Notes under the pieces: model-generated
Databases searched by the model: none
Told to the model about the DNA's origin: nothing
What the model saw: only the letters and a program-made list of their open reading frames with translations
Assembly (NCBI GenBank): GCA_965637545.1
Contig: OZ281499.1
Span: forward strand, 9,548,001 to 9,612,000
Source of the DNA: Phallusia mammillata
Lineage: Eukaryota
Reading direction: 5' to 3'
DNA length: 64,000 nt
Made by a program: the position numbers and the translations under genes
Shown here: positions 8,268 through 50,425 of the stretch, piece after piece
Position numbering within the stretch: position 1 is the stretch's first letter
Layout of the letters: each line of letters opens with the position of its first letter

Positions 8268-11200
8268 TCAATGAGGCTTTGTTTTTGCTAAATGCGGTAA
8301 AATTTTATCCATAAAAGTTTTACCGCGGTTGATACTTCCAGTTACTTCCTTTAGCCATGCGAAGGCGTTTTCGCGAAACTGTTTCGCTTCTTCAACACGA
8401 TATTCCATAGTTAAATGCTTTACTCGTTCATACAAGTCCAATGTAACGTCTCGGCGTTCCCGAAAGTGCACCCCTGGTCTGGAAAGCGGCGGACTTAAAC
8501 CGAGTCTGGGAGCAAAGAAACTACGCTCTGTACGAGTGCTGCGCGGCACGATAAGCAATGGTGTCGTCTCACTTTGACCCACAGCAGATAACAAGTCGTC
8601 CAAATCGATTAAGACCAGCCGTCGGCGCGAATCAAATGTATTTATGTATTCCTCCCATGGAGTAAAATCGCATTGGCGAGTCTGATGTAAAAATAAATCT
8701 CGTCTCCTAGAAGACGCTGCTGATGTCCTAAAAATTGAAGAACCTGTGGGTTTCGTTGCAACATCCTCTTCTCGTCTTCTTCGTTTCAGGGCTTCTTCTT
8801 CAACAAGCTCAGGAAACTCTTCTCTTCTTGCCTCTTCCATGTTGATCACTTCATCTAGCACAAGATCCAACATCTGTCGGAGGTTGATGAGAAGATCACG
8901 ATCAGCCTCCACGATCCTCTTCAGACGACGGATGATAAGTAATTGATCCCTGAGAGAGCGTAAGAGTCGGTTTTCCTGAGTCACATTTTGGAGCACTCGA
9001 TCTCTCTCCAGGATGATTTCACGAAGACGTTTATTGTTATTGATCGGGAGGCGACTTTCTAGTTCTTCGTTGGCCTGAAAAATGATAATTAATAGGAGTT
9101 AATAAGCGAAACATGAAAGCTTACAAACGTTAGAGTACTCGTGTCACTTTTATTATTTGACCATAGTCAACTGGGTTTTTTCAGAAAAAACAAAAACCAA
9201 TTCCAGTTAATCTATAATTTTTTTCTGTGTAATTTGTTTTGTCAAACAAACTGTAATTTTCGTCCGACGAAATCAGAAAATTGCTAATTGATTACAAAAC
9301 TCGTTGCAAAAAAACGTCGTAAGCGTTTCTTCAATACTCCAATCTTAAGTTAACATTATGCTTTGTAAATCAGAAATCGGTTTCGTCGAAAATACTGACC
9401 TGGTTTGAAATTTCTTCCGCTTGTTCGGCGGCCAATCGAAGCCGTTCAATTTCTCGTCGAATTCTCCTCAGGCTCTCGGGTGCGATTTCTGGAGCGGTTG
9501 AGTTATCCTCGTGTCCAGTGTTATCTAAAGCATTATTCAGCACTCTCTGTGCACCCTCTTCCAGATTTAGTGCATTCTTTCTAGCAGCTCCCATGTCTTG
9601 CTCGTTCGAGTTTAAAAATCGGATCTAAATCATTGCAAACTAATAGTTAGAAGGCAACCAATACTTACACAAAATCGTTTGGTTATGGTGTGTACTTGCG
9701 AAGAGGTTTAAGAATAAAGAATAAAGAAAAAAAATAAAAGTTTGAATCTAATGATTCAAGTTGCCTGCAATCTTATTTAGATTGCCTGTTTATTGTGCAA
9801 AAGGATCGTTTAAGGCAGGCCAAATAAATTAGATATGAAAATGGTAGAACCGTCTTTACATAAAGCAAAACCATTTGTAATGCTTTTATGGCAATGTGTT
9901 TGCCTTTACTTTTTACCAATAGACAGCCAAATTAACCTGCACGTAATTTAACGTGAAAACTGACAGTTGACATGACCATATTCTAATCTTACATAACAAT
10001 TTGGTAACAATCATCCGTTGGGTAATTTAGGACCAATTTTTCGAGTCAAAAATTCAGTTTTTTTCGAATCGTTTGGAACAACCCATAGTTTCCTAGTGCT
10101 AGTCCACCGAATAAAAAAAAATATTTTACACCACTTACAGTTTGAATGATGTCATCAATTTCACGCGGTGCTTGATTCCGATCAATGCCGAGTTGGTTGA
10201 GAAACGATTGAAAGAGTTGACTGGCCCGAGCGTCTAGAGTTGCAATTACTTCTTGTTTTGCAGTGACCTCTCTGTTAAAAAAGTGGACCTTGTTTGAATA
10301 TGCAATAGTTGACAAATTACTAAAATTTATTTATGTCCAAAGGGTTTTAAAAAATTAGATTAAAATTAGATAAATTCTTAACTGGAGTAACAATACTTCA
10401 AATGCATTCGATCCCGAAAAAATTAAGCTTGTTTAAATGCTTAGCAACAAAACTTCGGTAGGAAATGCTTAACATAAAATCTTTGGAGTTAATCCCCGTT
10501 TAAGGCCAATTATGTCCTTGAAAATTCACCGCTCTTGAGGTACTCGTTTACAACCCACAATGACAAATCATTGATCTTAAAAATCGTAACACACCGCACT
10601 TTGTGTAGGTTGTCCGAAGGTTTTTAAAAAAGTAAAACAAAATTGACCGGGACTAAGTAGGGTTAATGAATTTGTGCCCTCGGGTATTAGCTAAAATTGG
10701 AAAAAATGCAAGTAGGTGTAACCGCAAAGATATATTTACAGTCACCGGCACTGCGGTTTTTAAACTACACAACTGTATTTTCCACCAATGAAAACTGATG
10801 CAATTATGCTCCTAAACTAAGGCAAGCCTAAGTGTTTTAACCATTTAACTGCTGAGTTTGTTGTGATAAAAAATAATGTTTAGACACGTTCTTGCTCTTT
10901 AAGCAATGATAAGTTAAAAAGATACATGTCCGTCGCAACTTGGAATTTAAATGTGTTATATGCAGCCTACGCAATCCCACGAATGAGATTTTTTGGTAAT
11001 TAAGTTCAAGTATGTAAATGGCAACAAGTTATAATGATGTACAAACATTCTTGTCTAGAAATGGCTTACAAAATTCCTCACCGCTGAGCTAACGACTCCC
11101 GGTCATGCAGTTCTTCAATCAAACCGGTCAAATCGGCTTCTAGTGATGAAAGTCGATCAATCTGGTTCATTGTCCACTGCGAAGTTGGATAACATGAGCT

Positions 11201-13466
11201 ACAGAGAAAAAATATTCAGAATAAAAACTTGACATTAAAACGCATACACTGGAACAATGCCAGGAGCATAACAAACAGTTTTGTCGATAACAGTAAACGA
11301 TCCAACAGTCTGCAAACATGACATTGGCAGGTAAAAAGGTCAAAGTGCTATCCTTGCAGGCACGTTGAAGATATAATATTTGCTGCAATGTTTAATGTTT
11401 TGCGACCGTATCGACCAAAAATCTAATTTACGTTGAGTGAGATAATAAATATAGCAGTGGGGTATAATTGTTCGATTTTCGGCATGCCCAAACACCGCAT
11501 GACGTCACAATGGTTTGTTTCGTAGTAAAAAATACAGGCTGGGCGATTGATAGGAATCCCGTTGTTCACCCTAAAACTTTCTCGGTGGAAAAAGTTTGAT
11601 CAGGTGTCGTGATTACAGGCTATTTGGGGTAAACCTATCGCATTGAGCCGGTTGGTTTTCATCAAAAGCGCCCCAAGGGAACCGGGAGATACAATCTCTG
11701 TCTCACAAGAAATCACTGATGCCGAACTGCAAGCACAAAACAAATTGCGCAAAACCTGATGATCTCTACTTAGGACCTATGAGTATTTATTGTTTGAAAC
11801 AAAATTTTTGTCAATTTTATATGTAAGTTATACATATATACATCTATGCATATAGATTTTTGCGGGGGGAGTCATGTCCACATAAAATTATCTTATAAGA
11901 TTTTCTGAAAATGAAATAAAGATAAAACCAGGCACTCTTTGCACAAAATATCAGACGAACATTTCAAGTGGCATTACTGACACCGCCAAGTGGCCTGTCG
12001 TTATGGCAACTATGTAATCGTGTATTTACAGTCAAATTGTACTATACTCAAAGCCACACAACGTGTAAAGCCACTTGTAGCAAAAGCATCCCTTCGACAC
12101 ACCAAATAGCAGTAATTTTCTGCATAAAATTGGACAAAAGCAATTGTTCACGCCCAGATGGCAATGTATCGCGTTAATAAAACCCGTCATTATGGCACTA
12201 TATGTGAAGCAACGTTTCCGTTTTCGTGCACTTTAAGTCCATGTTTATAGAAAATATGGTATTTTTCTTTCCCACGTGGTTCCGTTCGAATTATGAATGG
12301 AGTGTTAAGACAGGTACATAATTCCAACACAAAATTTCGACCAATATTGTTGAGCGTTCGATAACTGCGATTTAAATGAAGTTAAGTTACAAGGTAAGAA
12401 TTTGAAGCTGTTTTTTGTTTTGATAGTTCGTTTGTTAAGGGTTTTTAACCGCTCCACGTAAAATGTTAATTTGTATGCAAATAAATTACACCAGCAATCT
12501 TTCAATTGAATAAACTTACCACCGACTTGCAATCGGCACATTGGTTCCATCCAGGCAACATTTCCTGTGAGTCTGGCTCAGAACTCTTCCTAAACAACAC
12601 ATACTTGCTTCTGAATTAAACGGACGTCCTCCGCAGCAATGAGTGGCTCGTCCTCCTCCAGTTCTTGCTCTTACCGGCTTTTGTGTTGTACCTTTGCAGA
12701 AACGGAAAGTTTAAAAATATTTGAGATGGGTATATTTTGCTTGGTGAATATAGCGACACAACCGCACTGAAACAGTCACCGGGTCAGAAATAGCTGCACA
12801 ACATTGAAATGTTCCAATATTTTGCATGATGACTTTCTTTTACTTGTGTTTAATGACTTATTGTTTAAGAATGTTTTGGAAATCTTAGAAAACAACTTTT
12901 TATAAGCAGCTAGGTTTTGTTAGGCTGAGTTAACACTAAGCCAAGCATGCACCGCACGTGTTGTTCTCTGTTTGCTAGAGGTAGTTGCTTAAGGCATTTG
13001 ATTGGAAGTCCTTGCGTTTCTTATCTTTGCGCTTATCGTGACGCCGTTTGCGTTTTTTGCCCTTTTTCGTTTTGTTCATTGCGGTTTTTACTTTGGAGTG
13101 TTGTTACTCTTATGAAGGCCAGAACAGGACGTTGAAACGTCGGTTACATTTGTCAGAACGTAATTTAGCTTTTATATGAAGCCTGGTAGCAACAGTTTAT
13201 ATAAAGCATACACCGTTGTTAAATGGTTTAAAAGTCATCGTTGGCATTTAATGCAAAGATAAGAAAGCTTGACCCAAAATAACTGCGTCAATATGCATTA
13301 ATCCGGCCAATACAAAAGATGAACCAAACTTACTGGTGACAACCAAAGTACCACTGGAGCTAGCTTGACATGGCAACCGGTTGATGACTTGAAGCTTTGC
13401 CAAATCCATCAACAGCAACAACAAGGTACATAGGAAAATCCGATTCGTAGGTTTAGTTGTCATCAT
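8268..13466 (-). CDS. Multi-exon secreted protein: signal peptide, galaxin-like di-cysteine repeat, Cys-containing middle, long coiled-coil/charged C-terminal half
   Basis: Exons with GT-AG sites: 13334-13466 (MMTTKPTNRIFLCTLLLLL), 12520-12691 (HCCGGRPFNSEASMCCLGRVLSQTHRKCCLDG), 11635-11697, 11432-11570, 11248-11309, 11082-11198, 10139-10271, 9400-9624, 8268-9074. Phases join in frame except the 12520 to 11697 junction, which is unresolved. Confidence 0.7.
13097..13170 (+). repeat. Hammerhead-like repeat, family B copy 1 (decayed core CTTATGA, GAAAC, stem III ACGT/ACGT, GUA site)
   Basis: Homologous to 26471-26557 and 60030-60118 (AGTGTT..TTACT-CT[G/T]ATGAAG ... GAAA[C/T]GTCGG..TTACATTTG[C/T]CAGAA). 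Lies in intron 1 of the secreted-protein gene, antisense. Confidence 0.45.
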
Positions 13467-15447
13467 TTTCGCCCACAAATTCGCCATGCAAAGATGTAGT
13501 GCTAGTTTGGGTAATCCGTGGTGTAAGACAAAAAGGCTTATCGCATACACAGGGTCTCTTCAAATTTTGGTCTAGCATTTTATGGTTAGGATCCACATTG
13601 AAGCATTGTGTGGCTATAAAGTTTAACTATTCTATATCGTGATCTGTGGATATTAAAAGTAGTGTCCGTGATCAACAAATAAAGTTAGAACGACTGACCG
13701 CCAAGGCGCTGAAATGATCTCGAAATGACGTTATGTGGTTGTAATCCATTATAAAACCCAAAATGTCGCCTCGAAGTTGGCTTTGACTGACATGAACGGT
13801 CGTGGTGTAACAATAGCATTCCTGTCAACAGGTTACGTCATCCAGCCCACATAATCTCTACCCTTGTGTAAACCTGTTGGTCTCTTTTCTTATTTGTAGA
13901 AAACACATTTCTAGTTGTAACTTCAAAGCCCCATACCTATTTAGGATATAGTTTTGTGGCCGCTGCAAACATTAATGCTATTTTCGCTGTGGATTGAACG
14001 CGAGGTTAAATACGGTGTGTCTTGTTCGATAGCATCCATAGCTAGTGCATTTTCTATCGCTAAACAACGTAGGGACTGTTCGTAATAGCAATTTGTATCA
14101 AGAGAACAAATGCCCTTAAGATTTATGCAACAATACAGTGAAATATTTTACTTGCACAATACCAAATTTTCTGCTATATTTCAAAACACCTCATAACTTT
14201 CCTCCTTGTCATTGTCTTCAGTTTTACCGACAGAACCGTAACTTTAGACCTCCTTTGGCACTTTTTTGTCATAATTCTCGATATACATTGCATTGACACT
14301 GTTACAAGTCATTTTGTGCGTCATGCCTAACTATTTCCTTTAACTCTTATTATAGTCTATGTTTCAACTTAGCCCAGCATTTTCGTGCCCAATAGCGTGA
14401 CAGTCATTTAGATTCTACACCTGTTGCAACTGTATCTGTACAAAGAGACAGAAGTTATAGCAAATATACCGCCTTGAGTCAATTATGCACTTGTTTAAAT
14501 AGCTACAGCTGTTTAAGTATGCTCTTAACGAACAAAATTGCCAAAATACGTAACAATTTTCTCAGATCACTGGCTAAATTAAATACAACTGCTAACTATC
14601 GCCAATTTGAAAGGCTTATTTCTTAAACAAGCGCTATACTCGATTTTCAAACTTATTTTGTTTATTTAGTCTGCACGCGTAACGATATATATAGCATTTT
14701 TGTACCACAAATGTAGACTGCTTAGGTTTCAAATATGCGATTATGTCAACTTTAAGCATTTACAGGGTACTCTTAAACAGTAAACTACTTAACATTGGTC
14801 TAGGTTATTGAGCAAATCTAGCCACATTTATACCTCTAACGTACATTAAAGTAAAAACTACCGCTAAAACGATTAAATTCAATGTGTCTGCAAAGCCCTC
14901 TCTATCAACTACTGATTCCAATTGTGCTGGCTTAACAAGCCGCGTTGATCCTTTATATGCGACGCTGATCTCTCTGTGGCTCGAGGCGCCGAGTTGCTTC
15001 ATGTTCTTATCGTTCGTCGCTGGTCGTTTGACCGATTTAGTCCGACATGAACGTTGTTTGTTTCCACGAGAACAAGCGTTGGCGCGAAGCCGGTTACACT
15101 TTTTGCTTTGGATATTTTTTAAAGAAACGCGTTAAGCTGGTGGGAAAAGCTTTCGAGAAAATCCGCATTAATTGTCAGGTTCATCATGTCAAGACAATGT
15201 AAAAACGAATTAAGAAAAATATCTTGGCCTGGTTATAGCTGCCGCATATGGCTTGGGACGAACACAAAACGCCTAAATATGTATACACATGTAGTTTAAC
15301 CTTGAACATATGTCGCTTCTAAATTACCGTATTTTGAACGTTGTTGTGGTACTTTGCGATGATTTTATTATATTTCAATACTTATTTTTCTGTTTTCTGC
15401 AACTAAATTTATTATGTTATGTAAACCCTTAAGGCCTACATAGTTGG

Positions 15448-15463
15448 ATTCTATTTGAATAAG
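15448..15463 (+). other. Exact genomic match to the Ciona-type 16-nt trans-spliced leader ATTCTATTTGAATAAG, not followed by GT
   Basis: Sequence ggATTCTATTTGAATAAGacagtgacgctgtctaatcgccATGatg. The leader identity is recalled from the Ciona intestinalis trans-splicing literature. Confidence 0.8.
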
Positions 15464-17145
15464 ACAGTGACGCTGTCTAATCGCCATGATGAAATATGTT
15501 TATACATGTTCAACCAAATGTGTGATTACATTCAAAATTTACATGTTCACATAGAATTAATAAGCTTGACAATTAATCACATAATCCCTTATCACAAATC
15601 CAATCGCCACAGTTCCACTTGTTTGAACATTTAAAAGCGCCTTGCATGCTGACGTGAAATCAGAAATTACAGACAATAGCCTGCGTTTCCCGTCAGTTTA
15701 AGTTCGGCGGGAGATGATCTACGCAATTTTCGTGTCTACCACTTCACACCTTGCAAAGTGGATTCTTACCGCAGCTCAACCGCAAAGTAGAGCCCAGCGA
15801 CGGTTATCTTTTGAAATTCCCCACTACTGCGACAAATCGTTTCAAAAGTTTGATTTGAAAGGGTTTATGTTTATTGTTTCACATCTTAAAGTTTAGAAGG
15901 CTACGAAACAAATAATAAATCAAAAAGCCGTGCATTTGAAAACTTGACATAAACTATTTTTTAAGATGATTGCTGTGTAAACTAAGCAACATCCAAGATT
16001 TCAAAATTCAAAGTTGTACTTTTTATTATTTAAAAACTTTATTGTCTGCATACGACACCAGAGAATATATTTTCTACGCGTTAACTATTTACTAATTATC
16101 TGCGCTCTATACTTTTTACACATTTTTTTTTGAATAAACAACCAACATATATACCTGAAACGACGACGATTTTTAGCTGCCATAGTAGTAAAATGCAACC
16201 TTTTACCATTGAGCAACCATAAAGGTAAACAAGAAGCTTTATACAACATAACGACGTTAACTTAAACTTAGCAACTACTGCCACGACCTTTTAAATTGGC
16301 GACCGGCGAAAAAGGTAGAAAAGACATACCAATTTGTTACTTCTCCTATCGCTACTTTCTCGTAAGATCTCTGTGGGGAAACACTAAGACAATGTGTCAT
16401 ATCTGTTAACCTTTTTCTATACGCCTGCACACTTCCTTAAGGCTTGAAGTTTCTCCTTTTTAAAAACATTTCGTATTGCGAAACGCTGTACACGGATGTG
16501 CTCATGAGTTCCGTGACGAATATAACGGCCCAAACAGACGTAAAAAGCGACATGATAAAACTGATGTAGCCTGTGTTACTAATGAAACATAAGTATTTGC
16601 CAAAATGGTTGAATACTAGTGCATTTTTTGTCTGTTTGGACCGTTATTTTTTATCATTAAATTTCGTATTGCGTTTAAAGATCAATAATATTTTTCAATA
16701 TTTTTTTTGTCGAAGTCATTTTCGTGATTGACTCAACAGAGCTTGCCTATGAACGTAAGTACACCTCTTCCGGCAGAAACAGTTGTAACATGACCTCACA
16801 CGAAGTGGCCCTGCAAACAATATACTGTCCTTCACAAAAATAGCGTAACAACTACCTTTTTGGCGGAAACATTTCTTAAGCCTGGCCCAGGAAACGTGAA
16901 CACAACAACAATGGCTCTCCTGATAAACAGGAAACAACAGCAGTTGTACCACAATCATGACACTTAGCTATAAGCTTGTAAACACGTTGTGTCATATAAT
17001 AACGTAGGTTTAGGCGTCATAAGCTGGGTTGTGGCAAGGAATGTGGTCGCGCAGAGTGTGAAAATTTGTAGTTCTCATGCGGCTGTCTTACTCGGTCATA
17101 TGAAGGCTAAATTTTGATCTGCTTTGTGTTCATCTTTTTTTCTAG

Positions 17146-17272
17146 CTTTGTGGGCGACCTTTTTTCTATTGCGGACCTTTTTTGAAACTAAAATTTTATC
17201 TCGGACTGGCCTTTAAAAAAACTACACATATTTAGCAACGAAAAGGCCTAAATTAGTGCTCGCCGACCACAG
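17146..17272. mobile_element. Degenerate short hAT MITE (family of 21116 and 31931)
   Basis: Internal TGCGGACC..TTTTGAAACT.AA.TTTT and TATTTAGCAACGAAAA.GCCTAAATTAG are shared with 21116-21232; right end CGCCGACCACAG; left TIR and TSD decayed. Confidence 0.6.
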
Positions 17273-19842
17273 GTTTAGTCGAGTTCTATGCACAACATAA
17301 AATGCAAACTTTACTTTGCGGTTATAGGTCGGATGGTTATCTCTTCAGCGTGCCGATCACGATGTAACTACGAAAAACCCTGGAAGCCAATAAACTGTAG
17401 GCCATCACAATGCAATGAGAACAATAGCAGGTAAAACTTAGATTTCGCAGATTAGAACTCGCCCTGTATTTTGAAACGACAGTAAATGTTTGATAAGAAA
17501 AAACATTTGGAATTACATTTTTTTGACTTTGCAATAATTTAACTACAACCATAATTACACAAATCATTCAACGCGAAAACACGAAATTGGTAATATTGTA
17601 TTTGTTTAGCGTATGAAGGATAGGTCACATCAAGTTTGTAGTGGACAATCCAGATTAACGTTGACCGCTGTGGAATTTCGTTCGCTTGTCCAGTGACCTG
17701 ATACGAAGATTAGGCTTATTTTCGCTTGCAAATCTCTCTATCCCTGCAGCAAGTAGGGCGGTTAACGTAGGAGCTGATGACATGCGCGCTTGTTTTGATG
17801 TCACCAGCAACAAACCTGAAACCCGAAACCGGTATTTCTACTTCGTATTTCGGTGGCTGGTTGAGCGCAGCCGAAATAACAAACATAAAAGTCAGGTGTT
17901 TGTCTTATGGCAGTTTTATAATGCACTAACAGTTTTAAAGTACATAACTTGTGACATGTGAACAGCAATTTTAAGCAGGTGCGTTTACATCAAAGATCAT
18001 TACGTTGATTAAATCTTTTCACCTCGGATATTTTTTGTCTGATGTATTTCGAAACTAAACGGCCAGATTTCCGATAATGGACTCGTTACCTAAAGTGCGT
18101 AAGGGCGTGAAATTGATAAGGTTGGTCTTTAAAGTGGCAAATGTTTACCACAAATCGGTGCATTTATGACTGGCAATGTATTTTAGAGGCAAATATCGAC
18201 CACAAACGGCGCATGTTAACCACAAATCGCTGCGTTTATGACTGACTGAAAATATATTTTAGAAATTTATACCTAAATGAAAGTCTAAAAACATACCATC
18301 CACTACTTTCTAATTAATGTTATGGTATATTTGTGTTTTGATTAAAATTACGCAATTTCACAAGTTAAATCCAAAGCTGGGGAAAACAAAATTCCATCGA
18401 TGTTTTTTAATAGCATCAAATAAAAAGACTAAATATTAGGCCTATGCTATGTATAGATACCAACAGCTGATTTAAAAATTTGCTTAATACCACAGATATT
18501 TAAAAACCACCAGCTTGATCATTCCATTCTCATTATATCGTGGATAAATTACATGTGTGTTATACGCACGTAAGGTATAATTTAAGTTAGTACTACGGCG
18601 TAATACATTTCGCCACGACAGATTCAACCGAATAATTGTAGTGTACATCAGATTTGCGACGGTTTCTAGTCAATTTGGTTACCGCTGGCGCAGCAACGTA
18701 TACTATAAGATTGCTGCAGAATTGTTAGTTTTCTCTCAGCATACCGTAATGACACACACGAAAATTCATACCACGTAAATATACTACAAATAGCACTCCT
18801 TAATTGCACAGTTCACGAAATGCCTGAACGAAAAACATATACATTGCCAATAATTTCTCTGCCCAAAGCAACAGCATTGCTCAAACTGACAATCGCGACT
18901 AGCGTTTTGAAACCTTGAACCAAATGCTTATTTCAACTTACATCGCCAAACATGCGAAATATATATTCCTTCTACTTAACTGACTAGTTTTGTTTTTCGA
19001 TTAGGGCATCTTAACACCCGATAGTTTCAACGCTTTCTGGTTGCAGTTGATACTATTTTGTTCTAGCTATAATTTGGTCTTCAAACTAAAATCACAGCAA
19101 ATTTTACATTACTGCACCATTCAAGCTTGTACTTAATATTCCATGAGTGTTTCGTCTTAAAAAGCAATAGAGTCCCTGCAAAACACAAGCCTTATCTACC
19201 GTCACAAAATTAACATATGTCCGATGTTTATGGTAAGCCTGCGAACAGACACACCCATACTTAACAGTGCAAGTAAATGTCGGTCAATCGGTAACGATCA
19301 GAAACAGTTGTAAACAAAAGTCAAAGGACGCTACGTTGCTTATCCGTGACCTTTAGACATTCCTTTGGGCCGATTGTTAACAGTTACCTGACGGCAAAGC
19401 AGCAATTAACCGATTGTACTAATTTGACTGCAGCAGACTTGACAACATTTCGCCTACTTTGCAGTTTTGATTGACACACAACTGATTCGCCAAAACTGGT
19501 TTTGTTCAAATTGGTTTAATGTTAAGACCTAAAGAATGGTTAGCTGGTTGGTTGTTTCTATTTGCTGGTATTGAATGATTTCTATTAATTCTCTTTTTTC
19601 TTTTCTACTGCAGGTGTTGCAACACAATGCGTTGTGTGACGAAACAATCAACTGCTAGTTTTGTGTGATAATGCAACGTGGTTTAGTTCTTTTCATTCAT
19701 GACTTTCGTGGAGCACGGTGCTACGTCGGTTGCATTAGAAATGCGTTTTTTTGTCGCCTGGATTATTGCTATCGGTGAGTCGCTTTGTACATATGTGTTT
19801 AACCCAACGAAATTTAATTCACAAAATAAGTGAACTACAATT

Positions 19843-19894
19843 AGCTGCAGACAGAGTAAACTGTTTCGACCCATAAGTTCTCACCAGTGCAACT
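19843..19894 (-). ncRNA. Type I hammerhead ribozyme motif, family A copy 1 (core CUGGUGA, GUC site)
   Basis: Minus strand AGTTGCA-CTGGTGA-GAACTTATGGGTC-GAA-ACAG-tttact-CTGT-C-TGCAGCT: stem I 7 bp with one GU, short imperfect stem II, stem III 4 bp, GUC triplet. One core substitution from CUGAUGA. Confidence 0.65.
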
Positions 19895-20760
19895 GGTGAC
19901 AAGAGATTTGCCGTATGAGCTAATCTGGACACCGTACGGTATTCAGTTTGTTGAAGATTCAGTATGTCACAACTGGACAACAACAGCGGAAGAACTGTTA
20001 ACAATGCCCAAGCAACTGTTTGAGAAACAAAGTGATTGGTAAGGATTGTGTGTGCCGTTATAGTAAAGCATTGTGTCTTGCTATTCATTCTATATTTATG
20101 TGTCTGACCATGTTTTCTGTTCCCAAAACAGATGGTGAGGATTGTGTTGTATTGATACATGTAAAGCGCAGTTATTAACGCAATATCTTTTGTGCAGAAA
20201 CCGTATCATTTCATCCCTGCATTTTGACATGTTTGCCCAAACACTTATATGAATTGATAACTTTCCATTCCCACGGTGTGACACATTCAGAAGGAGACGT
20301 AAGGTTTTGAATTTGCTTGTTTTTGAAAAATTTGCAAATTTGCTTGTAACTTGTTTAACTGTTTCTTTTTTACATTGATTAGTAATTTACTCGACAAACT
20401 TGAGTACAATTTTATTTTTGAAAGTCGGCGTAAATATTTTCGATTTTGAAGCAACTCTCAATTTCTATGTCAAGATGTATGTTTCATTGAAGTTTTGCCT
20501 CCGATTCTGTACACAGAAATATCTACAAGTGGTCGTTACAACCATCCCATTTTTGCTTCCTTGCTGTCCTAGAAGTTTCTGCAACAAAAACATACAAAAG
20601 CAGTTACATAAGAATAGCGACAGCATTCAAAATGGTTTCGCGTGCCAATGCTTTAACGCGTAAAGGTGCTTTTGTCCCAGCCGATTTAAATAGCGCAAAA
20701 GTTGCCGACCCATGAAGTATGTAGTAAAGCAACGTGAAACGACAACTTTTAACTCAGCAC

Positions 20761-22752
20761 TTACGTCGTCCATATCACATGCATATGGTAAAAATGATTA
20801 GCTGATGAGCCTCCTCTACCCAGAGCAGGACACTGAGTCCTGTATCCATATCTATTTAACTTTTCTTTTGCATTGCGTGTACCAGAACATCTGCCATTGT
20901 ATTGCAGTGTGATGGTGAGGTAGCCTCGATTATACGCAGCTTGTAAGCATTTTTGGATTGCTTCATGTCGTTTCCAATAATACCCGTCGAGAATAGGGTC
21001 GAGTCCTTCGAGAGTAGGAATAGCGAGTTCTCCCCCACTATCACCCCAGCATCCAAGGTCATCAAGGAGAACTTCAAAGAAAAAACGTGGTCGAAAAAAA
21101 TTCTGTCGTTTAGGGCAGGGGTCGGCAACCTTTTTTCTAATGCGGACCGTTTTTGAAACTGAAATTTTGTACAAAAAATACAAAAAATATTTAGCAACGA
21201 AAACGCCTAAATTAGGCGGTTGCCGACCACTGGTTTAAGGTGTAGAGCAGGGGTGGGGAACCTACTTAGTACTGCGGGCCGCATGATTTGCACAACATTT
21301 TCGGGCGGGCCAAATATTTTTTTACTTTCAAGTTCCGTGTAATAATACCCTCAGCATACAAGTGATTTTATATTTCATCGCTCCAGATTTGATTTTTTCT
21401 TTGCTGCTACATGTTTGCAACAAACAAAGCTTACAGGTTCATCACTTAATTCGACTAAAATCTGTCCATTCTTTCTGGAACACCCTAGCTCCATTTGAAA
21501 CTAACACCGCATGGCAAATGATTTGTTACTGGAAGAAGAGACAATCGAGTGACTGTTACGTCACAAATACAGCAAGTGTTTGAATGTGTGGCAATTTTAA
21601 TAAGTTTGGCGTCAAATATAGAAATGTCGAAGTCTTTTCAAGTAAATGTTTGTACATAAACATTTTATTATTGTTTTTTTATGCTACGTTATATGCTGTA
21701 CTTTAACAAAATTGTGACGCGGGCCACTTTCAAAATGCAAGCGGGCCGCAGGTTCCCCACCCCTGGTGTAGAGCTATTAGTTTTAGCAAAAACAGCCACA
21801 GGTTCTGCAAAATAGCAAACAAATCTAAACTGGTGTGAAATGTTTTGTGCAGTGATACATATTTTTTGATAAGTTTATGATGTACCTTTCGAAATCGACT
21901 TGATTTCGTAAACTTGAAATGTCGATAGTCCACCTTTACCGTCTGAACTACATTCTTTACTCGGGCCATTTTGTCGGTAATTTTCTCGGGCTTTAGCTGA
22001 ACTTAGGCACAGACCTCCATCCTGCAAAACACATTAAACTATTCTATACACGTACATGCGATTTGAAAAGTAGCGTCTTATGTCAGGCGATAAACAACCG
22101 AAAGGTAAGTTAGTTGCCCTAAAAAAAACATAAGATGTAAGGACAAAAGTAGATTGAACACATTGTGGGGACTTCCGTTTGCACGAAATAATAACTTTCA
22201 TTCGAACTCCTACTAGGATACTAAAATATGGGCTTGAGTCAATTGCTGCAAACACTCGTTAATTCGATGGTTTTTAGTACTGATACCTGAAGGGCAAAAA
22301 CGTCGTCGCCGTATTTGAAAGCAACTACGGCACACTTCACAATGGCATTGGATCTATGTTTGTAGTTTCCAAATAAATCTCTATCCCACTCTCTAGACGT
22401 ACCGGTAAAACTTTTCCAGCATCCCAGATTGTTGTAGGTCGCTAGACAAGAAATATATACGCTTTGATTTCCAAATTGTGTTATTTTATGTCACAATCGA
22501 CATAGCTGTATCAAATGCTGTTTGATTAATTAGTTTCGGCTTTTAAACTGTCTGGAATTTTTCAAGTACCTTCAAGATGACTGTTTTAAAGACTTTCAGT
22601 CTTTTTAGTCAACACACGTACGTTGCGCTTTGGTATCAAGTGTCGATTTTGACGTATGTGTTACAATCAATATTACCTGGATAATAGTATATTTTACTAT
22701 TCTCCTGTGCTTTAGCAGCAGCAAACGCGATGAGAAAGACGAGTATCTTCAT
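20761..22752 (-). CDS. Secreted protein (about 225 aa) with two invertebrate WSC-like domains
   Basis: Exons 22677-22752 (MKILVFLIAFAAAKA signal), 22287-22441, 21886-22021 and 20761-21071 join in phase. Two repeats of LGCW...Y..R..AI.KC...A...G.....Q..G.C......Y..G....C...G.GG....Y resemble the WSC-like repeat I recall from cnidarian and amphioxus proteins. Confidence 0.85.
21116..21232. mobile_element. hAT MITE in an intron of the WSC-like gene
   Basis: TIR CAGGGGTCGGCAACC / GGTTGCCGACCACTG; 8-bp TSD GTTTAGGG / GTTTAAGG (1 mismatch). Confidence 0.85.
21248..21765. mobile_element. hAT MITE, 518 bp
   Basis: Perfect 16-bp TIR CAGGGGTGGGGAACCT, GCGGGCCGCA subterminal motifs at both ends, perfect TSD GTGTAGAG. 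Confidence 0.92.
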
Positions 22753-25700
22753 TTCGGCTGAAGTGCCTAAATCTTCTTATCTCTTTAAAATATAAAAGTA
22801 AATGTAATCTCAGCACTTTTTATAACAACACAATTGTAAGCATTTTTTCGCGTCGGTTTTGTTTATGAAAAAGTTGGCTCTGTTTGTAAAAAACCCAAAA
22901 GGTCGATTCTATATTTGAAAACTATGCCGGAAATATAAACATGTCTAACTTAGTGCCTCTTCTTACATCCGCTAATACAACTGTGGAGAGTCGCAGACTT
23001 TTCATCACAACAACATCGTGCCATACAGTTATTGTTTGATATAAAAGCATTCTTAATTGAGAAACATTAAAAAATGCGCTAAACAGTCTCTTTGACAAAC
23101 CAAGTTCCCAACATGCTGTTTTCAATGTATCTCCATCAGTCATAGTATGTCTATTTGTTTACCGCCTGTGTTAACCTAATAGATGGCTACATAGGTCGCG
23201 GGTTTTGTTTCTCCTGTAAAGCTTTGAAGGCTGGCCACACACAACATTGAAAAAGTGACGTCATTGTTAACATTACATCACCAAATAACATTACTGACTG
23301 GCATTTGGTGCCAAACTGGCGTAGTTCATAATAGTTTTTATAAGTATGGAACTTAGCAGACTGTATTTAAAGCTAAAAACCTAAGCTGGTGGGAATACAT
23401 CCAACAGCTTGGTTACAGTTTAAACTTTTAGACATTATTGTGTCTTTGGATAAATGTTTGATTTTATGTGCTTTCTTTTGATATAAACTATATGTACTTC
23501 AACAGACTTGATTTTATTCCCCTTTGTTTATGTTTCTGTGTGCACAAACAGCAGAATGTCGTGAAAAAAATGATCATTCTTTTTTTTGCAGAATTGTAAA
23601 CATTTTGAAACACAAATTATGGAAAAGTATATGCGACAACACCGACAATTAATGTTTTTTGCACTTATCGCAAAATGGGGACGAGATTACGGATTTGGTG
23701 AGATAATGGAAAATGTAAGAAAACATTTATTTACTGAACAATTAAGCATGTCTTTTTGACGTCTTTTTTTGCCGTTATTTTCGTGTACTTCGTGCTGTCC
23801 GGTATATGCACCAACGACCTTTCGTAAATAAATATTAATGTTTGCCTGCAAAACTACAGGTTTATGTTTGGTGCAAAAACAATCTCGTTTATCAAAAAAT
23901 ATCTTCCAAAAAACTGCGGATGGGTTGGTTGTTAACTAAACATTTATTAAAAAATAAATGATCTCCTGGCAAATGTTTTGTTTTGTCCACGTTTTAACGA
24001 TATTTTGTGCCTGCTGGTGCTCTAGCGCTCCCTAGGGTCAAGGGCTGACTTCAAACATTAATTTATCGTTATCACCAAAATCCAACTGAAGCTGCCAGAG
24101 CCCGCTGACACATTGGCTATCAGTGCTAAACCAAACACAGAAATCATGCATCTGCAATATTGACATTTTGCGTCTAAGCAATTAAACCGACTTACATAAC
24201 ACACCTTTGTTGTTTTTTTCGTTGGTACTACCACACCTTTAACACTCTTTTGGTAAATATTATTCTAATAAGAATGTAAACTATAAAAGTAGCTTAGGTG
24301 GTGTTTGATACCCATTGACGGCATCAGACTTCACAAAATACTGATCATTAACATATCATGCTTAGTTACTATGACAAAAAAAACTTAATAAATTCGCGCA
24401 GATGTGATTTGAAGTTTAACAAATAACAGTTGTTTGGTTCAGTAAAGGATATTTTAGTAAAGTTCTTTATACGATACAAGCAACTACTTGATGTGACACG
24501 ACACAAACATGTATGACAATGAAATTGACGCTTGGCCCTGTTTAAGTTCTGCAACCCAGGTTTAAGGCCTTCGTTCGGCTCACTGTACAATGACGCTGAG
24601 ATATGGGTTTGACATAACAAATATTTGGTACATCATCATTAAATCAACCTAAGAAATTGGCTTACGACCGAATGCGTTTTTTCCCAGCAAATACCGGTTT
24701 GTTGACCCTCAACATTTTGATCGCTGTATTTATCAGTTGCATTGCTGTAACAAACACTTGAGTAGTGTCTGCCCTTCGACCGCATTATGAGTCTTTTGCG
24801 CTCCTTATCAAGCGTATAATGTTTACCCGGGGCGCTAATCATAAGTTGCCAGCGGTTCAACATTACAAAATCTCATAAACGGATGTTTTAGATCACCCAT
24901 CTTAGGATTAGCCTGGGTGCCTGTTATTTTCAACTCAACAGTATCGTATTGTTTTATTTTTTTCACAAAACTGCACAGCTTAGACGAAACTTGTTTATCG
25001 AATTTAAATCTAACAACCTATAATTTCTGTTTAACATGTATAAGAACTATATCAACTCTACATTCATTAAACCCAGTATGGTAAAAATTACACTATCAGC
25101 ACCACGCATTTAAGCATACCAAAACGCAAAAGCAATTTTATTACTGCACCTTGCATAAATGCTTTTTTATCATCGTCAATTAAACATAGGAAACGAAAAG
25201 CAAGCGTTTTGAAGATAAGGCAATTTACTTGTAAACTATTGGACGGTAACAAAAAAAGGTAAATACGGCTTTAAGTGAAGCGTACAAACGTTAAGAAAAG
25301 AAAAAAATACACTCCAAAGAATTAAAACTACAAGTTTTGTATTCATAACGCTTTGTAGCAACATATTTTTCCGTCAAATGCTACAAGTTGCTTAAAACGG
25401 CATAAAGTGAGACTAAACAGATTGTGGTGGTATTGTATGGCTGGCCCTTCTGTGAGTGCCCAAAGCGTGCATTTAATTATTTGAATGATTTTCTACACTG
25501 CAGACTTTTTCAGTACAAACAACATGATATAAAAGCATTCAAGACCTGATTAATTATTATTGTCCTTAAAATCACTGCACAGTGATATGAAATAGCGCAA
25601 CAGCATTCAATCAACTTTGTTAAGAAAACCAGGACCATGTTGAACAACATTGAAATTGAAGTAATAATTGTGAACACGAACATTTTCAAAACAATAAAAC

Positions 25701-25763
25701 AACAACGGTTTAGAACAGGCAAAGACTGAACCATGTGCGTTTGGTTTGCACAGACATTGCGTG

Positions 25764-28700
25764 CTAGACATTGTCCGTGTCATAAGTAAAATGTGGGTTA
25801 GATTTAATGTCTTTCATTTCCTTTTCGGAATCGAACTGGCGGTACCCAAGCATGTCCAACGCCTCTGAGCAGATATTTTGTATCTCCTGTACTCCTTCGT
25901 ACGTTAAACTTTTTCTCCATTCTGACACAACTGCTACAGAATTCCGTTTTGTGCTTTGTTTACTTGTAATCGATAGATTTCTGTTGTTATCTGCTGATGT
26001 GGCATCTTTAAGCCAAGCCTCAATCCGTGGGTTCATGTTGATTCCAATGAAATCATAAACGGCCTGCATGTAAGAAAATACCACGAATAAGTGTCTCAGA
26101 AAACACATACACTGTACATTAAAATTCCAAACATTGTAGCATTAAACTAACTGAATTTGTTGAATAACGCAGATAATTATGTTATAAGCAAATGGTAAAT
26201 AGACGTTTTAACTGCAAACAGAATTGGATATCTTATCAATAAAAATACTACATATATATATCCATAAGGAACACATGGTTTATGATCAATCTTGTCACCT
26301 TCAGTAATCAATGCCTGTCCCTTTACACGCCCGGAAAGGCAAATTTGCCTTTCAACAGACTCATGGCTAGTGTTTTAGAATAAGAAATTGAAGCTCTCCA
26401 CAAGAATCCATTGACTTGAATGGTGTGTACTATTGCTATTGCTACCAGGCATAATATCAAGTTTATTGCGAGTCGCATTCAGTGTTATTTACCCTGATGA
26501 AGACGACCTGTATATGACGTCGAAATATAAGAATAAATTACATTTGCCAGAAGAGCCCTCTATAAACTTGAATGGTGTGTGTTTTTATAATTACAATAGG
26601 TTTCAATATGTTGCTGGTTCACATGGTTAAGATTTAAACCTTCAAGATGGGAAATTCTTTCATAATCATTACCTGTGTTACTTCTATTGGATTTATCGCA
26701 AAATCTTCGTGTCTGATTCGCATGTATTTGTCTTTGAGCTCTCCAGTTTTAAGCACGTTTTCTGCAAAGATGATGTTTTCGATCATTCTAGGGCAAATTC
26801 CATTCGCTACGTGTCTGAAAAAGTTAGGTTCTTAGCTGAGATATGAATTCAAAAATGAGCGTGTACTCTACACTCTGCAACGAGGTGCAAGTACGATATA
26901 ATTCCAGTAGCATATTTTACAATGTTTGCCTTATATTTTTCACATATCAAACAGTGGTTTCGAACTTTTCAAGCATGCGGCGTGCTAACAAACTATGTTT
27001 TTTCGCGGGACACTTGGTAGGTCAACGACACAAAAGTTGTTTAAAGAAAGTTCATTTAGAACTTTAGGCTTGTGGATGAGACTACTTTTTTGACACATGA
27101 GTAAATTCAAACACCAGACAATATTTGCACTTTGAAATATCAAATACTTCCTGGCAAACTTTAAACTATTTGTGCAGCGAAACGAAGTTTGAGAATCATT
27201 GATTTAAATGTGGGAATTGCTAAACAAAAAGAAAAAAATATTCGAAAATACTTGATAAGAAAGCTAAAACAGTGTACATTGTTTTTGCCTAGCTATAGGT
27301 CACATCAGTGCAACTGTTGTCTGCGATGTGCACTGTATGCAGTTTACCCATCGAAAACCTGCTGTTAATGCTACATAGGCCTAGTTAATGTATAACACAA
27401 CGTCGATCAAAGAGAAAGTGACATTCTTGCATGTTAAGTTCCAATTTTATTTCACGGGACAACTAATATTTGCCCCAGCTCTTTACAACCTTATTATTAG
27501 GGTCTTGCCTCTAGGTAATTTGTAAAACTAGACTATAACTTATATGGTTTTGTTAGTCATGAATTACATTGTACCGATACCGTTTTTTGTGGATGTGTTT
27601 AGAGGTTGAAATTAACCAAAACAAAAACGTCAATCAAATAAGTCACATATAAGACATCCGCAAATAACCAGAAATGCCGTGAACCAAAATAATATATTTT
27701 TGTTCAAATTTCTTTCATTTAGATTTCGTCAGATTTGGCCCAAATTAATTTCAGTCTTTTTACAAGAAAGCGTTATTTTTGTTAGCAAAGTTTATGAAGT
27801 TGGTTTACATGTAACTTATTTACATGGTCAAACTGGGCATTACATTTGCGTTAAATCTATTAACGTTTTCTGTTTTCACAATGACAAGGTTGCTATAATT
27901 TCATTAAGTTTTGAAAAATGGACTGCAAACTTTTAAATAAGTTCGATTTTAAAATTTATCAGTCAGTGTTTTCCAAAATATGGGTCCTAAAGCATTACTT
28001 TTAACCTCCCTTTATTAAGTTTTGTTTTTCATTTTTCACAGCTTTAAACTGTTGCGTATAGCGATTGTATAATTAATGTGTGCACATTTGGAAGTAGCCA
28101 AATCAGCTCATTTCGACTTGTAATTCACGGCTTGTGAGTAAGTTAAATTGTGTAGCAAGTTAAGTTAAATGTACTGACCAATCATGTTTGAACTTTGCAA
28201 TGTTTCCTGGCGCAGTTAATGAGGATGTAGATGTGACCTCACGAACTGGTGTTACGTGCTTTGACCGTATGTTTTGTCCTGTGCCGTGATTAGACTGTGC
28301 TTTGTGCAGGAAACAAAACTTCGTTGGCTTCAGACTATAGTATTTTCACTACGACTTATTTTGACGAGCTAACGTTGCATTTGTTGTGGCGAGACAGGTT
28401 ATATGGCTGATAATGCATCGGACTCGCTTTCAAATATGCGTCAATCGAATTGTTTGGACATACGACGGAATCATTTCGATCAAAAAATAATTTTCCAACC
28501 CAAAAAAACAAAGTTTCGAAAATCTTATTCGTAAATAAAAAAATTCTTGATTTATAAAGATGCATATTCATTGATCGTAGGTAATCTTTAATCAATTCCT
28601 TAGATATATTTAGGTCGCGCCAAAAACCAGTCTGGTTTAAATGAATAAACAAGTTCCAAAACTTTTACAAACCTCAATAACCGATAAAGTTTAACCAAAG

Positions 28701-30625
28701 AAACAAAAAGACAATAACTCACCTGACAAGTGAAACACGGTTTTTCGATGGGTTACTCCGGGTTCTTGAATTTATTGTAGCTCGCGGGTCTCGTACCAGA
28801 TGTACGATTTTGAGGTTGACCGTATGACTAGATAACAGTGGAACCAGCCACTCCAATTTGCAGAGGTATATCACCTGCATGCATAGGAGCGGTAAAGGTT
28901 TTTTTAAGACAACAATTGTAGTCTGTTATTCTTTAAGGTGCCTATCCCTGTGATGTTAAACCACAATCCCGACAAAACAATCCGTTTTTAATTATTACGA
29001 CCCGCCATTTATTTGCAAAGATTCAGTTCTGAAGTTATTCATAACAAAGACCAGAACTGTGCTTTCTGACTTATGAACCATGAGGAATCAGTAGGCGAAT
29101 AACCAGCATGTGTTTGTAGGCACTCACCTTCATTGCTCGTAACATGCTCTGTTTACAGTATTTTGCCAAGGCCGGAAGATTGATTGGTTCAGGGCACTGC
29201 TGCTTATTGTTTCCCAAATTGCACAAACCCGCGTCTCTCGACAGAAACCTGCTGTATTTATCTCCCCCAGTGAAGCACACCTTTTTCTTCAGGCACCTAT
29301 AAAAGACATAGCTACTTTGTAGTGTGAATTTAATGGGTAAGAAAACAGTTAAACTATGGAAAGTGCGGTTTGCTAGGTGTTTAGACAAAGCCGTTAGTCT
29401 TTCGAGCAAATGAAAAATATTTTTACCACGTTTGCGAAATTAATCTTTAAGTTTGAAACGCATTTGTTAACTAATGTTTGAGGAAAAAGACCAAAGCTTA
29501 TTATTCCACCCAATACGACCGAATGTTAAATCAAACTGACCTTCCACTAGGTTTTACAGATTGTTTTGCTTGTTATAGTAGTAAAGAAACCCCTTGACCC
29601 AATTTGAATTTTTGTGTCCGAATGGTGGGGCTAATTACAATGAATAAGCCTTTACCTTTAAGTGTAAAAAGGTTCCTTTTTTAACATGGTTAAACTCCAT
29701 TGGAATTAAAGTTTGTGTTCGTCTACTGCCTGCTTCTCGTTATCAGCTTATATAAGAATGAAAGAATTTATAATTTCATTGTGGCGAAGCCTAGATTATA
29801 GAAAACACTTTTTAAAGCTTTATTTCGGCCTTTGAAAAAACAACCTTGACCAGGGTTTCACACTTCGCAATAACTTTGATTTAGCCTCCCTTACTTAAGG
29901 GTGATATTGATTTGTCGTTCGTTTTCATTTAGGCATTTGCCAGATCGCGTTGCTTCACATAAAGGAGTCGGTTTCAACTTGACGCAGGCACGGTTCATTG
30001 AAGTTAAACATTAACATAAGGTCCGTTGTTAGAACGAAACGTTTAAGAAACTCTGGCGTCAAGATAAAGATTTGGTACCTAGCACCACAGGAACATGAAA
30101 TGTTGACCAAAAATTTTTGACTGGCATTGTAATACACAACAGCCTAAACTTTGTGCGTTTATGGGTTATTGTGTTTCTTTTAGCAAAATGTAAATTATGT
30201 TACTTTGTAAATAAAATTATTTTGTCAGAAGATACAACTTACTGGGCATATTTGTCCGAGCATTTACTGGCGTTGAAACCGCGAATGTAGTGTTCTTCCA
30301 AGTCAAATCGGCAATTGACAACTTTTTGCAACACCTGTAGTCTGTCCTGCAACAATTCCTCACAATTTCGTTCGGAAAAGGGCAAAAGAGGTTCGTAAAA
30401 GTATGCCACGTCCGTTCGCTGGTTAAAAATCTCCCCTAAGACGCTGGAACCAGAGCGTTTTTGGGTAAACAGAATCACAACGTCCGTTCGTTGTGGCGTC
30501 TGTATGATTGCTTGCTTGCTTTCGATTTTGGTTGAAGGCATGGTATAATGATACCATACTGTAGATAGGAAGGTTACTGTCAAGAGGAGCAACGTAAACT
30601 TGACAAATCTACGGATGTTTTTCAT
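25764..30625 (-). CDS. Golgi type II carbohydrate sulfotransferase, CHST1/3/5/6-like, copy 1 (381 aa)
   Basis: Exons 30243-30625, 29128-29296, 28723-28874, 26673-26814 and 25764-26063 join in phase. N-terminal signal anchor, 5'-PAPS motif TQKRSGSSVLGEIF, FYEPL, 3'-PAPS motif IVHLVRDPRA..NSR, YMRIRHEDF. Confidence 0.92.
26429..26580 (+). repeat. Hammerhead-like repeat, family B copy 2, bounded by a 15-bp direct repeat
   Basis: CTGATGA at 26494-26500, GACG..CGTC stem, GAAA at 26522; near-identical to 60030-60118. ACTTGAATGGTGTGT occurs at 26414-26428 and 26566-26580. Intronic in CHST copy 1. Confidence 0.6.
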
Positions 30626-31147
30626 TTCTTATACCATTGGGTATACATGTGAAGGAAAATTGTGATCTTTTGACGACGTATCAGCTACTGCATTTACGTT
30701 AGTCCTGTTAATTGCCTAAAGCTGTACAGAAATAAAAATATGAAGGTGTGTTAAAACAATAATAAAACACACTGGATTGAAAAGTAGCCTGATAAAACAA
30801 ACTGTCAGAACATTGTAAAAATTATGTTCCTTTTTACATCCACTGATTTTGTTTCTATGAATGTTTCCACATTCAGTATAGTTACTTTGACAAAAAATTA
30901 GGTTGTCCATCGTAAGGACAGATGTTGCTGATCTTGATAACTTTCAAATGCCTCAGTGTGTGTATATTGTGTAAACCTTCATTTTAGCTTTTTTGACAAT
31001 TATTGAATATTTTTTTATTATCTACACAAGATCTATTGCAATGTGGAGTAAACTTAATACCCAACATCTTTGTTCACAACAGATTTAATAATGTTTGTTG
31101 TGTGATGTTCCCCCGTTATTCCCGTTTTAAATACCTTAAGTTTTAAC

Positions 31148-31540
31148 CAGGGTTGCCATACCGTCCTTATTTCTAAGATTTGTCCTTATTTTGAAGGGTA
31201 GTGTCTTAGAAAAATGTATTGTCCTTATTTCTAAAAATGTCCCTGTTTTTGACTTACGTCCTTATTTTGTCTTATTTTCAACAATTACAAGTGAAAAAAC
31301 CTGCTACAAGTAAAAGTAAACCTAGACCTGAGCTGTCGTGAGTTGCACTAAATATTTTCTACGAACAAGGAGTTGCTGGAACAGATTGTTTCTGGCCAAA
31401 AAATGGCATGTGATATGTCATGCCTCGTATAAATGCAAAGATTTATTCGAAAACGTTTGTTTCGTTTCGAATGCAAACTTAATTTTTCGGTTGTCCTTAT
31501 TTTCGGATCCGTGTCGATGGCAAACACTAGTTTTAGCCTG
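31148..31540. mobile_element. hAT MITE with GTCCTTATTT subterminal repeats (same family as 39310)
   Basis: Left TIR CAGGGTTGCCA; right TIR interrupted (TGGCAAAC[ACTAGTTTTAG]CCTG); perfect TSD GTTTTAAC; body highly similar to 39310-39682. Confidence 0.85.
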
Positions 31541-50401: not shown

Positions 50402-50410
50402 TTTATAAAA

Positions 50411-50425
50411 CCACTTCTGACACCA
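50411..50425 (-). other. Primer-binding site TGGTGTCAGAAGTGG
   Basis: Immediately inside the 5' LTR; complementary to a tRNA-Leu 3' end (CCACTTCTGACACCA), as I recall for Mag-clade elements. Confidence 0.85.

What the first reader, a model, noticed from the sequence alone, without database searches (positions are those of the whole stretch)
15448..15490. Spliced-leader sequence fixed in the genome: likely retro-inserted 5' end of a trans-spliced mRNA
Seen: ATTCTATTTGAATAAG is followed by ACAG rather than a GT donor, then 22 nt to GCCATG and a 22-codon ORF; G residues precede it. Known: this 16-mer is the Ciona SL and normally reaches mRNAs only by trans-splicing; SL RNA genes have GT directly after it. 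Inference: this is cDNA of a mature trans-spliced transcript inserted into the genome, as in SL relics described for dinoflagellates. My rough chance estimate, assuming A=T=0.32, is about 3e-4 per window. I found no poly(A) tail or TSD, so only a short 5' piece may have been captured.
Basis: partly seen in the sequence, partly recalled or inferred. Interest (0 to 1): 0.8.

Follow-up and report, generated by a model that had tools for sequence, protein, structure and literature searches.

The report
Orphan spliced-leader copy in sea-squirt DNA
An exact copy of the 16-base leader that sea squirts splice onto their messenger RNAs sits in non-coding DNA without the features of a leader gene; it is probably a small relic of a leader-bearing RNA copied back into the genome, but none of the usual retrocopy hallmarks could be found.

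Summary
The exact ascidian spliced leader (SL) lies at 15448-15463 (+). GG precedes it and ACAG follows it rather than a GT donor. A GCCATG lies 22 nt further on and opens a 22-codon ORF.

The sequence is real genomic DNA: contigs from two independent DNA studies run straight through it with no variant.

Over a whole 120-160 Mb genome, 0.2-0.6 chance hits are expected, so chance is not negligible.

No independent sign of a retro-inserted mRNA was found:
- no poly(A) tract or target-site duplication;
- no protein domain in any + strand ORF for 4 kb downstream;
- no RNA contig on the locus in two RNA assemblies, and no shared words in 12 RNA runs.

It also fails as an SL RNA gene: no GT donor, no Sm site, no tandem unit.

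Some DNA contigs link SL+8-13 nt to an abundant 180-nt repeat. These are most simply a polymorphic insertion or low-copy paralogs, and they say nothing about where the SL came from.

Best reading (about 0.5): a short, inert relic of a reverse-transcribed SL-bearing RNA of unknown source.

This scan has already reported better-supported SL-tagged retrocopies, LINEs and hammerhead repeats elsewhere in this genome. This locus is a weak extra case.

The parts
15446..15447 (+). GG directly before the SL. This fits non-templated G from reverse transcription of a cap, or it is chance (about 3%).
15448..15463 (+). Exact 16-nt ascidian spliced leader.
   Evidence: The sequence is as in PMC1488885 Table 1. 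It is present without variants in DNA contigs of runs X3 and X1.
15462..15478 (+). Perfect 7-bp hairpin (AGACAGU-GAC-GCUGUCU) that overlaps the last two SL bases. It contains the 13 nt (15464-15476) that other contigs share with this locus.
   Evidence: the fold of 15448-15530 gives -20.7 kcal/mol, z -3.3; joints at 15471 and 15476.
15486..15554 (+). 22-codon ORF plus TAG stop, opened by GCCATG. No evidence that it is coding.
   Evidence: no Pfam match for + strand ORFs
15542..15557 (-). Inverted SL-like 16-mer, 13 of 16 matches. Its 12-nt arm is 11/12 complementary to the start of the SL.
15367..15382 (+). Weak SL-like 16-mer, 12 of 16 matches, 81 nt upstream. Together with the inverted copy it forms a marginal local cluster.
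   Evidence: Composition-matched shuffles give two or more such flank hits in 1.4% of trials; the test was chosen after seeing the data.
16481..16660 (+). Context, not part of the SL relic. A 180-nt hairpin-forming dispersed repeat flanked by a perfect 13-nt direct repeat (16468-16480 and 16661-16673). Its 41-nt core (16514-16554) has roughly 1,500 copies by depth and occurs in RNA contigs. In other contigs, copies of it are linked to SL+8-13 nt.

Best explanation
The 16-mer is a true derivative of the spliced leader, not a leader gene. It is most likely a short DNA relic of the 5' end of an SL-trans-spliced RNA, either a host mRNA or (at least as likely) a repeat or retroelement transcript. 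That RNA was reverse-transcribed and became fixed in non-coding DNA.

Shown here:
- an exact SL with a sharp end of identity at the SL 3' end;
- no donor;
- GG in front;
- presence in independent genomic samples.

Inferred, not shown:
- the RNA intermediate;
- the identity of the source RNA;
- how only a short 5' piece came to remain (capture of a short cDNA, or loss of the rest by deletion).

The locus shows no sign of transcription or coding and is taken to be inert.
For: - Exact SL, followed by ACAG rather than GT.
- SL identity confirmed from PMC1488885 and PMC7986045.
- GG precedes it.
- DNA contigs of two studies cover it unbroken with no variant: X3 record 21 spans 13001-16546, and X1 record 4 spans 14141-16109. 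Runs of a third study hold 0.88-0.91 of the 1-kb words.
- It fails the SL RNA gene features.
- Base rates: chance gives only 0.17-0.6 hits per genome. Against that, Ciona assemblies hold several donor-less SL loci (PMC7986045), and earlier notes of this scan report SL-headed retrocopies, LINEs and repeats in this same genome (not re-tested here).
Against: - No poly(A) tract and no target-site duplication within 6.5 kb downstream.
- No ORF with a Pfam match on the + strand up to 19.5 kb.
- No RNA contig lies on 13554-16488 in runs X10 and X18 at 80% likeness or better.
- None of 12 RNA-labelled runs share words with the locus.
- Target-primed reverse transcription starts at the 3' end of the RNA, so a copy that keeps the 5' end should be full length. 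A 5'-only piece needs an extra event.
- Nothing shows that homology with other copies begins at SL base 1.
Confidence: 0.5

Rival explanations
1. This is a retrocopy of the 5' end of a host protein-coding trans-spliced mRNA whose 5' UTR is the 22 nt after the SL and whose start codon is the GCCATG. It is a sub-case of the best explanation, and its share is counted inside that 0.5.
For: The layout SL, then 22 nt, then a Kozak-like GCCATG, with GG in front. Short 5' UTRs after the SL are usual in Ciona; this last point is from my own knowledge.
Against: - The ORF stops after 22 codons, and all frames downstream are full of stops.
- No Pfam match.
- No matching RNA contig in two RNA assemblies and no shared words in 12 RNA runs.
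- No extra DNA depth over 15547-15680 that a parent exon with 80% likeness or better would give.
- The intact SL means that decay cannot explain the lost coding frame.
Confidence: 0.12
2. This is a fragment or pseudogene of an SL RNA gene, spread at the DNA level or as a retrocopy of the 46-nt SL RNA, whose donor and intron part have been lost or replaced.
For: - SL RNA pseudogenes are described as rife in Ciona, and some SL loci there lack a donor (PMC7986045).
- There is a marginal cluster of SL-like 16-mers around the exact copy: 12/16 at 15367 and 13/16 inverted at 15542. Composition-matched shuffles reach this in 1.4% of trials. The cluster could be the remains of a small SL-related array.
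Against: - No GT after the SL.
- No AGCTTTGG-type Sm site in the next 60 nt.
- No tandem unit and no second copy in the window.
- No Rfam match.
- A 16/16 intact exon next to a totally unrecognisable intron part is not what neutral decay gives.
- The SL RNA gene of this species was not available to compare.
Confidence: 0.2
3. This is a chance occurrence of an AT-rich 16-mer in AT-rich non-coding DNA.
For: - 0.17-0.6 exact hits are expected per 120-160 Mb genome, and the scan looks at every window.
- Every independent hallmark of retroposition is missing.
- The flanks are 66-68% A+T and rich in short repeats and hairpins.
Against: - The per-window probability is 1-2.4e-4.
- GG precedes the match.
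- Donor-less SL copies in ascidian genomes are reported at numbers well above 0.6 (PMC7986045; scan notes). Most such copies therefore cannot be chance.
Confidence: 0.13
4. This is the 5' head of a member of an SL-headed repeat family in which SL+ACAGTGAC is fused to the abundant 180-nt repeat. The window copy would be broken after 15476.
For: Contigs in two DNA runs link a piece of 28 nt or more ending at 15471 or 15476 to the repeat core starting at 16526. X3 has two such contigs (depth 313 and 367) and X1 has one (depth 26.7). Earlier scan notes describe SL-headed repeat families in this genome.
Against: - The joints are labelled 'between: not known', so direct fusion is not shown.
- The main contigs run unbroken through the locus in both runs. 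In a 31-mer graph this fits short side branches, meaning a polymorphic insertion beside the SL or low-copy paralogs, better than a dispersed family.
- No mismatches are listed in the extra pieces.
- The SL locus does not align significantly with the local repeat copy or with the pieced family consensus (shuffles score as well 20-49% of the time).
- No hammerhead or reverse-transcriptase ORF follows the SL.
Confidence: 0.1

Closest known systems
Relic spliced leaders at the 5' end of dinoflagellate retrogenes (reviewed in PMC6050394, PMC5585692, PMC12014239)
   Same: A trans-splicing leader is written into genomic DNA at a place where no leader gene lies. It is read as the mark of a reverse-transcribed mature RNA.
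   Different: Dinoflagellate cases carry an intronless coding sequence with an identifiable parent. They often have stacked partial leaders and are transcribed. Here there is no coding sequence, no parent, no poly(A), no target-site duplication and no transcript.
Ciona SL RNA genes and their pseudogenes (46-nt SL RNA, 264-bp tandem unit; Yeats et al. 2010 as cited in PMC7986045)
   Same: The same 16-nt exon sequence.
   Different: No GT donor, no Sm-binding motif, no tandem repeat unit. The sequence on both sides is unique within the window.
SL-headed retrocopies, LINE families and hammerhead repeats reported earlier by this scan in the same genome (s1-395739, s1-375379, s1-408599)
   Same: An exact SL not followed by a donor, in the same genome. 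One LINE case also has an inverted SL-like copy after the leader (s1-382231).
   Different: Those cases have a recognisable body after the leader: a retro-copied gene, a LINE or a hammerhead repeat. This locus has none. No hammerhead motif or Rfam hit follows the SL, and there is no reverse-transcriptase ORF.

Membership tests
SL RNA gene | SL exon sequence | tested here: met
   Exact 16/16 at 15448-15463.
SL RNA gene | GT splice donor directly after the exon | tested here: not met
   ACAG follows. The nearest GT is 3 nt further on (ACA|GTGACG).
SL RNA gene | Sm-binding motif (AGCUUUGG in Ciona) within about 25 nt of the donor | tested here: not met
   No such motif in 15464-15530. The motif is taken from PMC7986045; the motif of this species itself is not known to me.
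SL RNA gene | Member of a tandem gene repeat | tested here: not met
   Only one SL in 64 kb at up to 2 mismatches. No repeat of 14800-17500 around it.
Processed retrocopy of an SL-trans-spliced mRNA (SL-relic retrogene) | Leader at the exact 5' end of the inserted unit | tested here: inconclusive
   The 5' boundary cannot be set without an empty site or other copies. GG before the SL is suggestive only.
Processed retrocopy of an SL-trans-spliced mRNA (SL-relic retrogene) | Poly(A) tail and target-site duplication | tested here: not met
   No A-rich tract up to position 21170, and no direct repeat of the upstream 35 nt next to one.
Processed retrocopy of an SL-trans-spliced mRNA (SL-relic retrogene) | Intronless coding sequence related to a parent gene | tested here: not met
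   The ORF has 22 codons. No Pfam match in any + strand ORF from 15425 to 19471.
Processed retrocopy of an SL-trans-spliced mRNA (SL-relic retrogene) | Parent transcript with the same sequence after the SL | tested here: not met
   No RNA contig on the locus in X10 and X18. No words held by 12 RNA-labelled runs. The search was limited to assembled contigs of the runs on offer.
SL-headed retroelement family (LINE or Penelope-type hammerhead repeat) | Reverse-transcriptase ORF or hammerhead motif after the leader | tested here: not met
   Pattern scan, Rfam at E up to 10 and Pfam all negative.
SL-headed retroelement family (LINE or Penelope-type hammerhead repeat) | Many copies that share the sequence after the leader and differ before it | tested here: inconclusive
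   Two or three extra contigs share SL+8-13 nt. Their upstream sequence could not be read.

The most novel reading that the evidence does not exclude
The locus records a short cDNA of only the 5' end of an SL-capped RNA, captured in the germ line without poly(A) or target-site duplication, for example at a DNA break. With the inverted SL-like copy 78 nt downstream, it would form a small SL-bounded unit. This would be a second, non-LINE-style route by which leader-bearing RNAs re-enter a chordate genome.
Probability: 0.1. Interest if true: 0.6.

Novelty: new member of a known kind. Interest (0 to 1): 0.3.

Why it matters
Leader tags in DNA are a clean marker that an RNA went back into the genome after processing. 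In tunicates this would let retroposition of trans-spliced RNAs be counted, as is done in dinoflagellates.

This locus adds little. It is a bare tag with no body, so it neither dates nor identifies the RNA. Its main use is as a caution in two respects:
- An exact 16-mer is expected by chance about once in every two to six genomes of this size.
- An orphan tag needs a genome-wide alignment before it is called a retrocopy.

Tried and rejected
- **Hammerhead after the SL.** A pattern scan for CUGANGA...GAAA found motifs only at 26494 and 60053, far away. Rfam found none, either over the whole window at E up to 5 or over 15350-15750 at E up to 10.
- **C/D-box snoRNA.** There are weak Rfam hits at 15403-15463 and 15479-15527 (E 0.8 and 9, about half the gathering score). 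Each has a C-box-like AUGAUGA but no D box, and 49 nt is too short. Rejected.
- **LINE or other coding body.** Nothing in Pfam.
- **Homology of the SL locus with the neighbouring abundant repeat.** By eye, ATAAG-(3-4 nt)-GTGACG is shared with 16504-16518. Local alignment against shuffles is not significant. Dropped.
- **Similarity of 16571-16615 to the hammerhead-like copies at 26494 and 60053.** MAFFT did not support it.
- **Other copies outside the window.** Metagenome scans and viral scans for SL+8 nt and for the repeat core found nothing.
- **Allelic contigs.** The look-up of encoding contigs on five window ORFs found nothing on record.
- **Literature.** Vandenberghe 2001 and Matsumoto 2010 are not held. 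I found no paper on SL-tagged retrocopies in tunicates.
- **The search of earlier findings by sequence.** Blank.

Full report
**The observation**

The window holds one exact copy of ATTCTATTTGAATAAG, at 15448-15463 on the + strand. There is no other match with up to two mismatches. This is the Ciona spliced leader (SL) as printed in Table 1 of PMC1488885 and in PMC7986045.

- GG precedes the leader.
- ACAG follows it, not GT.
- 22 nt separate it from a GCCATG.
- The ORF from that ATG has 22 codons and ends at TAG 15552-15554.

**Chance**

With the window's composition, the 16-mer is expected 2.4e-4 times per window with independent bases, and 0.9-1.3e-4 times under Markov-1 or Markov-3 models. 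The same numbers give 0.17-0.6 hits per 120-160 Mb genome. The scan reads every window, so one such hit somewhere is not surprising in itself. The case against chance therefore rests on context and base rates.

**Is it real genomic DNA?**

Yes.
- The 1-kb stretch is held at 0.88-0.96 of its words by runs of three studies.
- When contigs were laid on 13001-17000, an 11,198-nt contig of run X3 covered 13001-16546 with three differences. A 1,969-nt contig of run X1 covered 14141-16109 with one difference, at 15157.
- Neither run shows any variant in 15448-15490.

cDNA contamination of a single assembly is excluded.

**Is it transcribed, or is there a parent transcript?**

No support was found.
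- None of the RNA-labelled runs offered holds words of 15000-16000 or 15440-15700.
- In the two RNA assemblies laid at 80% likeness or better (X10, X18), no contig touches 13554-16488. RNA pieces lie only at 13006-13553 and on a dispersed repeat at 16489-16556.
- A parent exon elsewhere in the genome with 80% likeness or better to 15547-15680 would have added DNA depth there. None is seen.
- These are assembled contigs, which are poor at 5' ends, so the negative result is limited.

**Retrocopy hallmarks**

- No A-rich tract occurs before position 21170. No direct repeat of the 35 nt upstream of the leader lies beside an A-rich tract.
- All + strand frames downstream are broken. None of the seven + strand stop-to-stop ORFs between 15425 and 19471 has a Pfam match above cut-off.
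- The leader is intact at 16 of 16 bases, so age cannot explain the missing marks. Either only a short 5' piece was ever inserted, or the rest was removed.
- Target-primed reverse transcription starts at the RNA 3' end, so a 5'-only copy needs an extra event.

**SL RNA gene features**

Going by the description of the Ciona gene in PMC7986045, the locus lacks all of the following:
- the GT donor;
- any AGCTTTGG-like Sm site;
- a tandem unit.

Rfam gives nothing at gathering level and no SL RNA or hammerhead at permissive E-values. A perfectly kept exon beside an unrecognisable intron part fits a junction better than a decayed gene. I could not compare with this species' own SL RNA gene.

**Local structure**

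- The last two leader bases and the next 15 nt form a perfect 7-bp hairpin (15462-15478). The region 15448-15530 folds better than all 200 shuffles (z -3.3).
- An inverted SL-like 16-mer (13 of 16) lies at 15542-15557.
- A 12-of-16 copy lies at 15367-15382.
- Two such flank hits arise in 1.4% of composition-matched shuffles. The test was chosen after seeing the data, so I treat this as marginal. It could hint at an SL-related array, or it could be noise in AT-rich DNA.

**The link to an abundant repeat**

One search shows contigs in which a piece ending at 15471 or 15476 is joined to sequence starting at 16526. X3 has two such contigs and X1 has one.

The target, 16481-16660, is a 180-nt hairpin-forming repeat flanked by a perfect 13-nt direct repeat. 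Its 41-nt core has a depth that corresponds to roughly 1,500 copies.

I first read the joints as an SL-headed subfamily of this repeat. Four points weaken that reading:
- The joints are marked 'between: not known'.
- The extra pieces show no mismatches.
- The main contigs pass unbroken through the locus in both runs. In a 31-mer graph this points to short side branches.
- The SL locus does not align significantly with the repeat.

The simplest reading is a polymorphic insertion of the repeat 8-13 nt after the leader in other haplotypes, or low-copy paralogs. Either way, the joints do not show that homology begins at the leader.

**Base rates**

- PMC7986045 reports that SLFinder found 28 SL loci in Ciona, of which 21 had a donor, and that SL RNA pseudogenes are rife.
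- Earlier notes of this scan report SL-headed retrocopies, LINE families and a hammerhead repeat family with a few hundred copies in this same genome. They name the species as Phallusia mammillata and state that its genes receive this leader. I did not re-test those claims.
- If they hold, donor-less SL copies far outnumber the chance expectation, so an SL-derived origin is the better bet for this one too.

**Verdict**

| Reading | Confidence |
|---|---|
| Fragment of an SL RNA gene | 0.2 |
| Chance | 0.13 |
| Head of an SL-headed repeat family | 0.1 |

It is a weak further example of something this scan has already found in better form on other DNA of this genome, and of a kind well known from dinoflagellates. 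I found no paper describing it in tunicates.

Noticed in passing
window 16468-16673: A 180-nt element (16481-16660) that folds into a long hairpin (arms about 16506-16549 and 16620-16663), flanked by a perfect 13-nt direct repeat ATTTCGTATTGCG. Its 41-nt core (16514-16554) is nearly invariant, has roughly 1,500 copies by contig depth in two DNA runs, and occurs in RNA contigs. A duplication of that length suggests a retroposed SINE-like element rather than a classic MITE. Contigs that join it to 15471/15476 suggest recent or polymorphic insertions.
   Followed up: partly
window 17150-17277, 21121-21237, 31936-32041: Three copies (78-82% alike) of a short repeat with GGCAACC...GCCGACCAC ends, probably a MITE.
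   Followed up: partly
window 26494-26526 and 60053-60085 (+): Two near-identical copies of a CTGATGA...GACGTCGAAA hammerhead-like core with shared flanks. Rfam does not report them, even at E up to 5 over the whole window. Another note of this scan concerns hammerheads in 19843-37611.
   Followed up: no
window 46691-50491 (-): An intact 1,266-codon ORF with reverse transcriptase, RNase H, integrase zinc-binding and integrase core domains: a Ty3/gypsy-type LTR retrotransposon pol.
   Followed up: partly
window 13001-13163: A dispersed repeat of roughly 8-14 copies by depth, with many variant letters. A low-depth RNA contig also covers 13331-13553, and its first 157 nt lie elsewhere, which suggests a spliced transcript.
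   Followed up: no
window 8271-10330 (-): Three long open frames (276, 84 and 94 codons) that are charged and coiled-coil-like, probably exons of one minus-strand gene. No Pfam family reaches its cut-off.
   Followed up: partly
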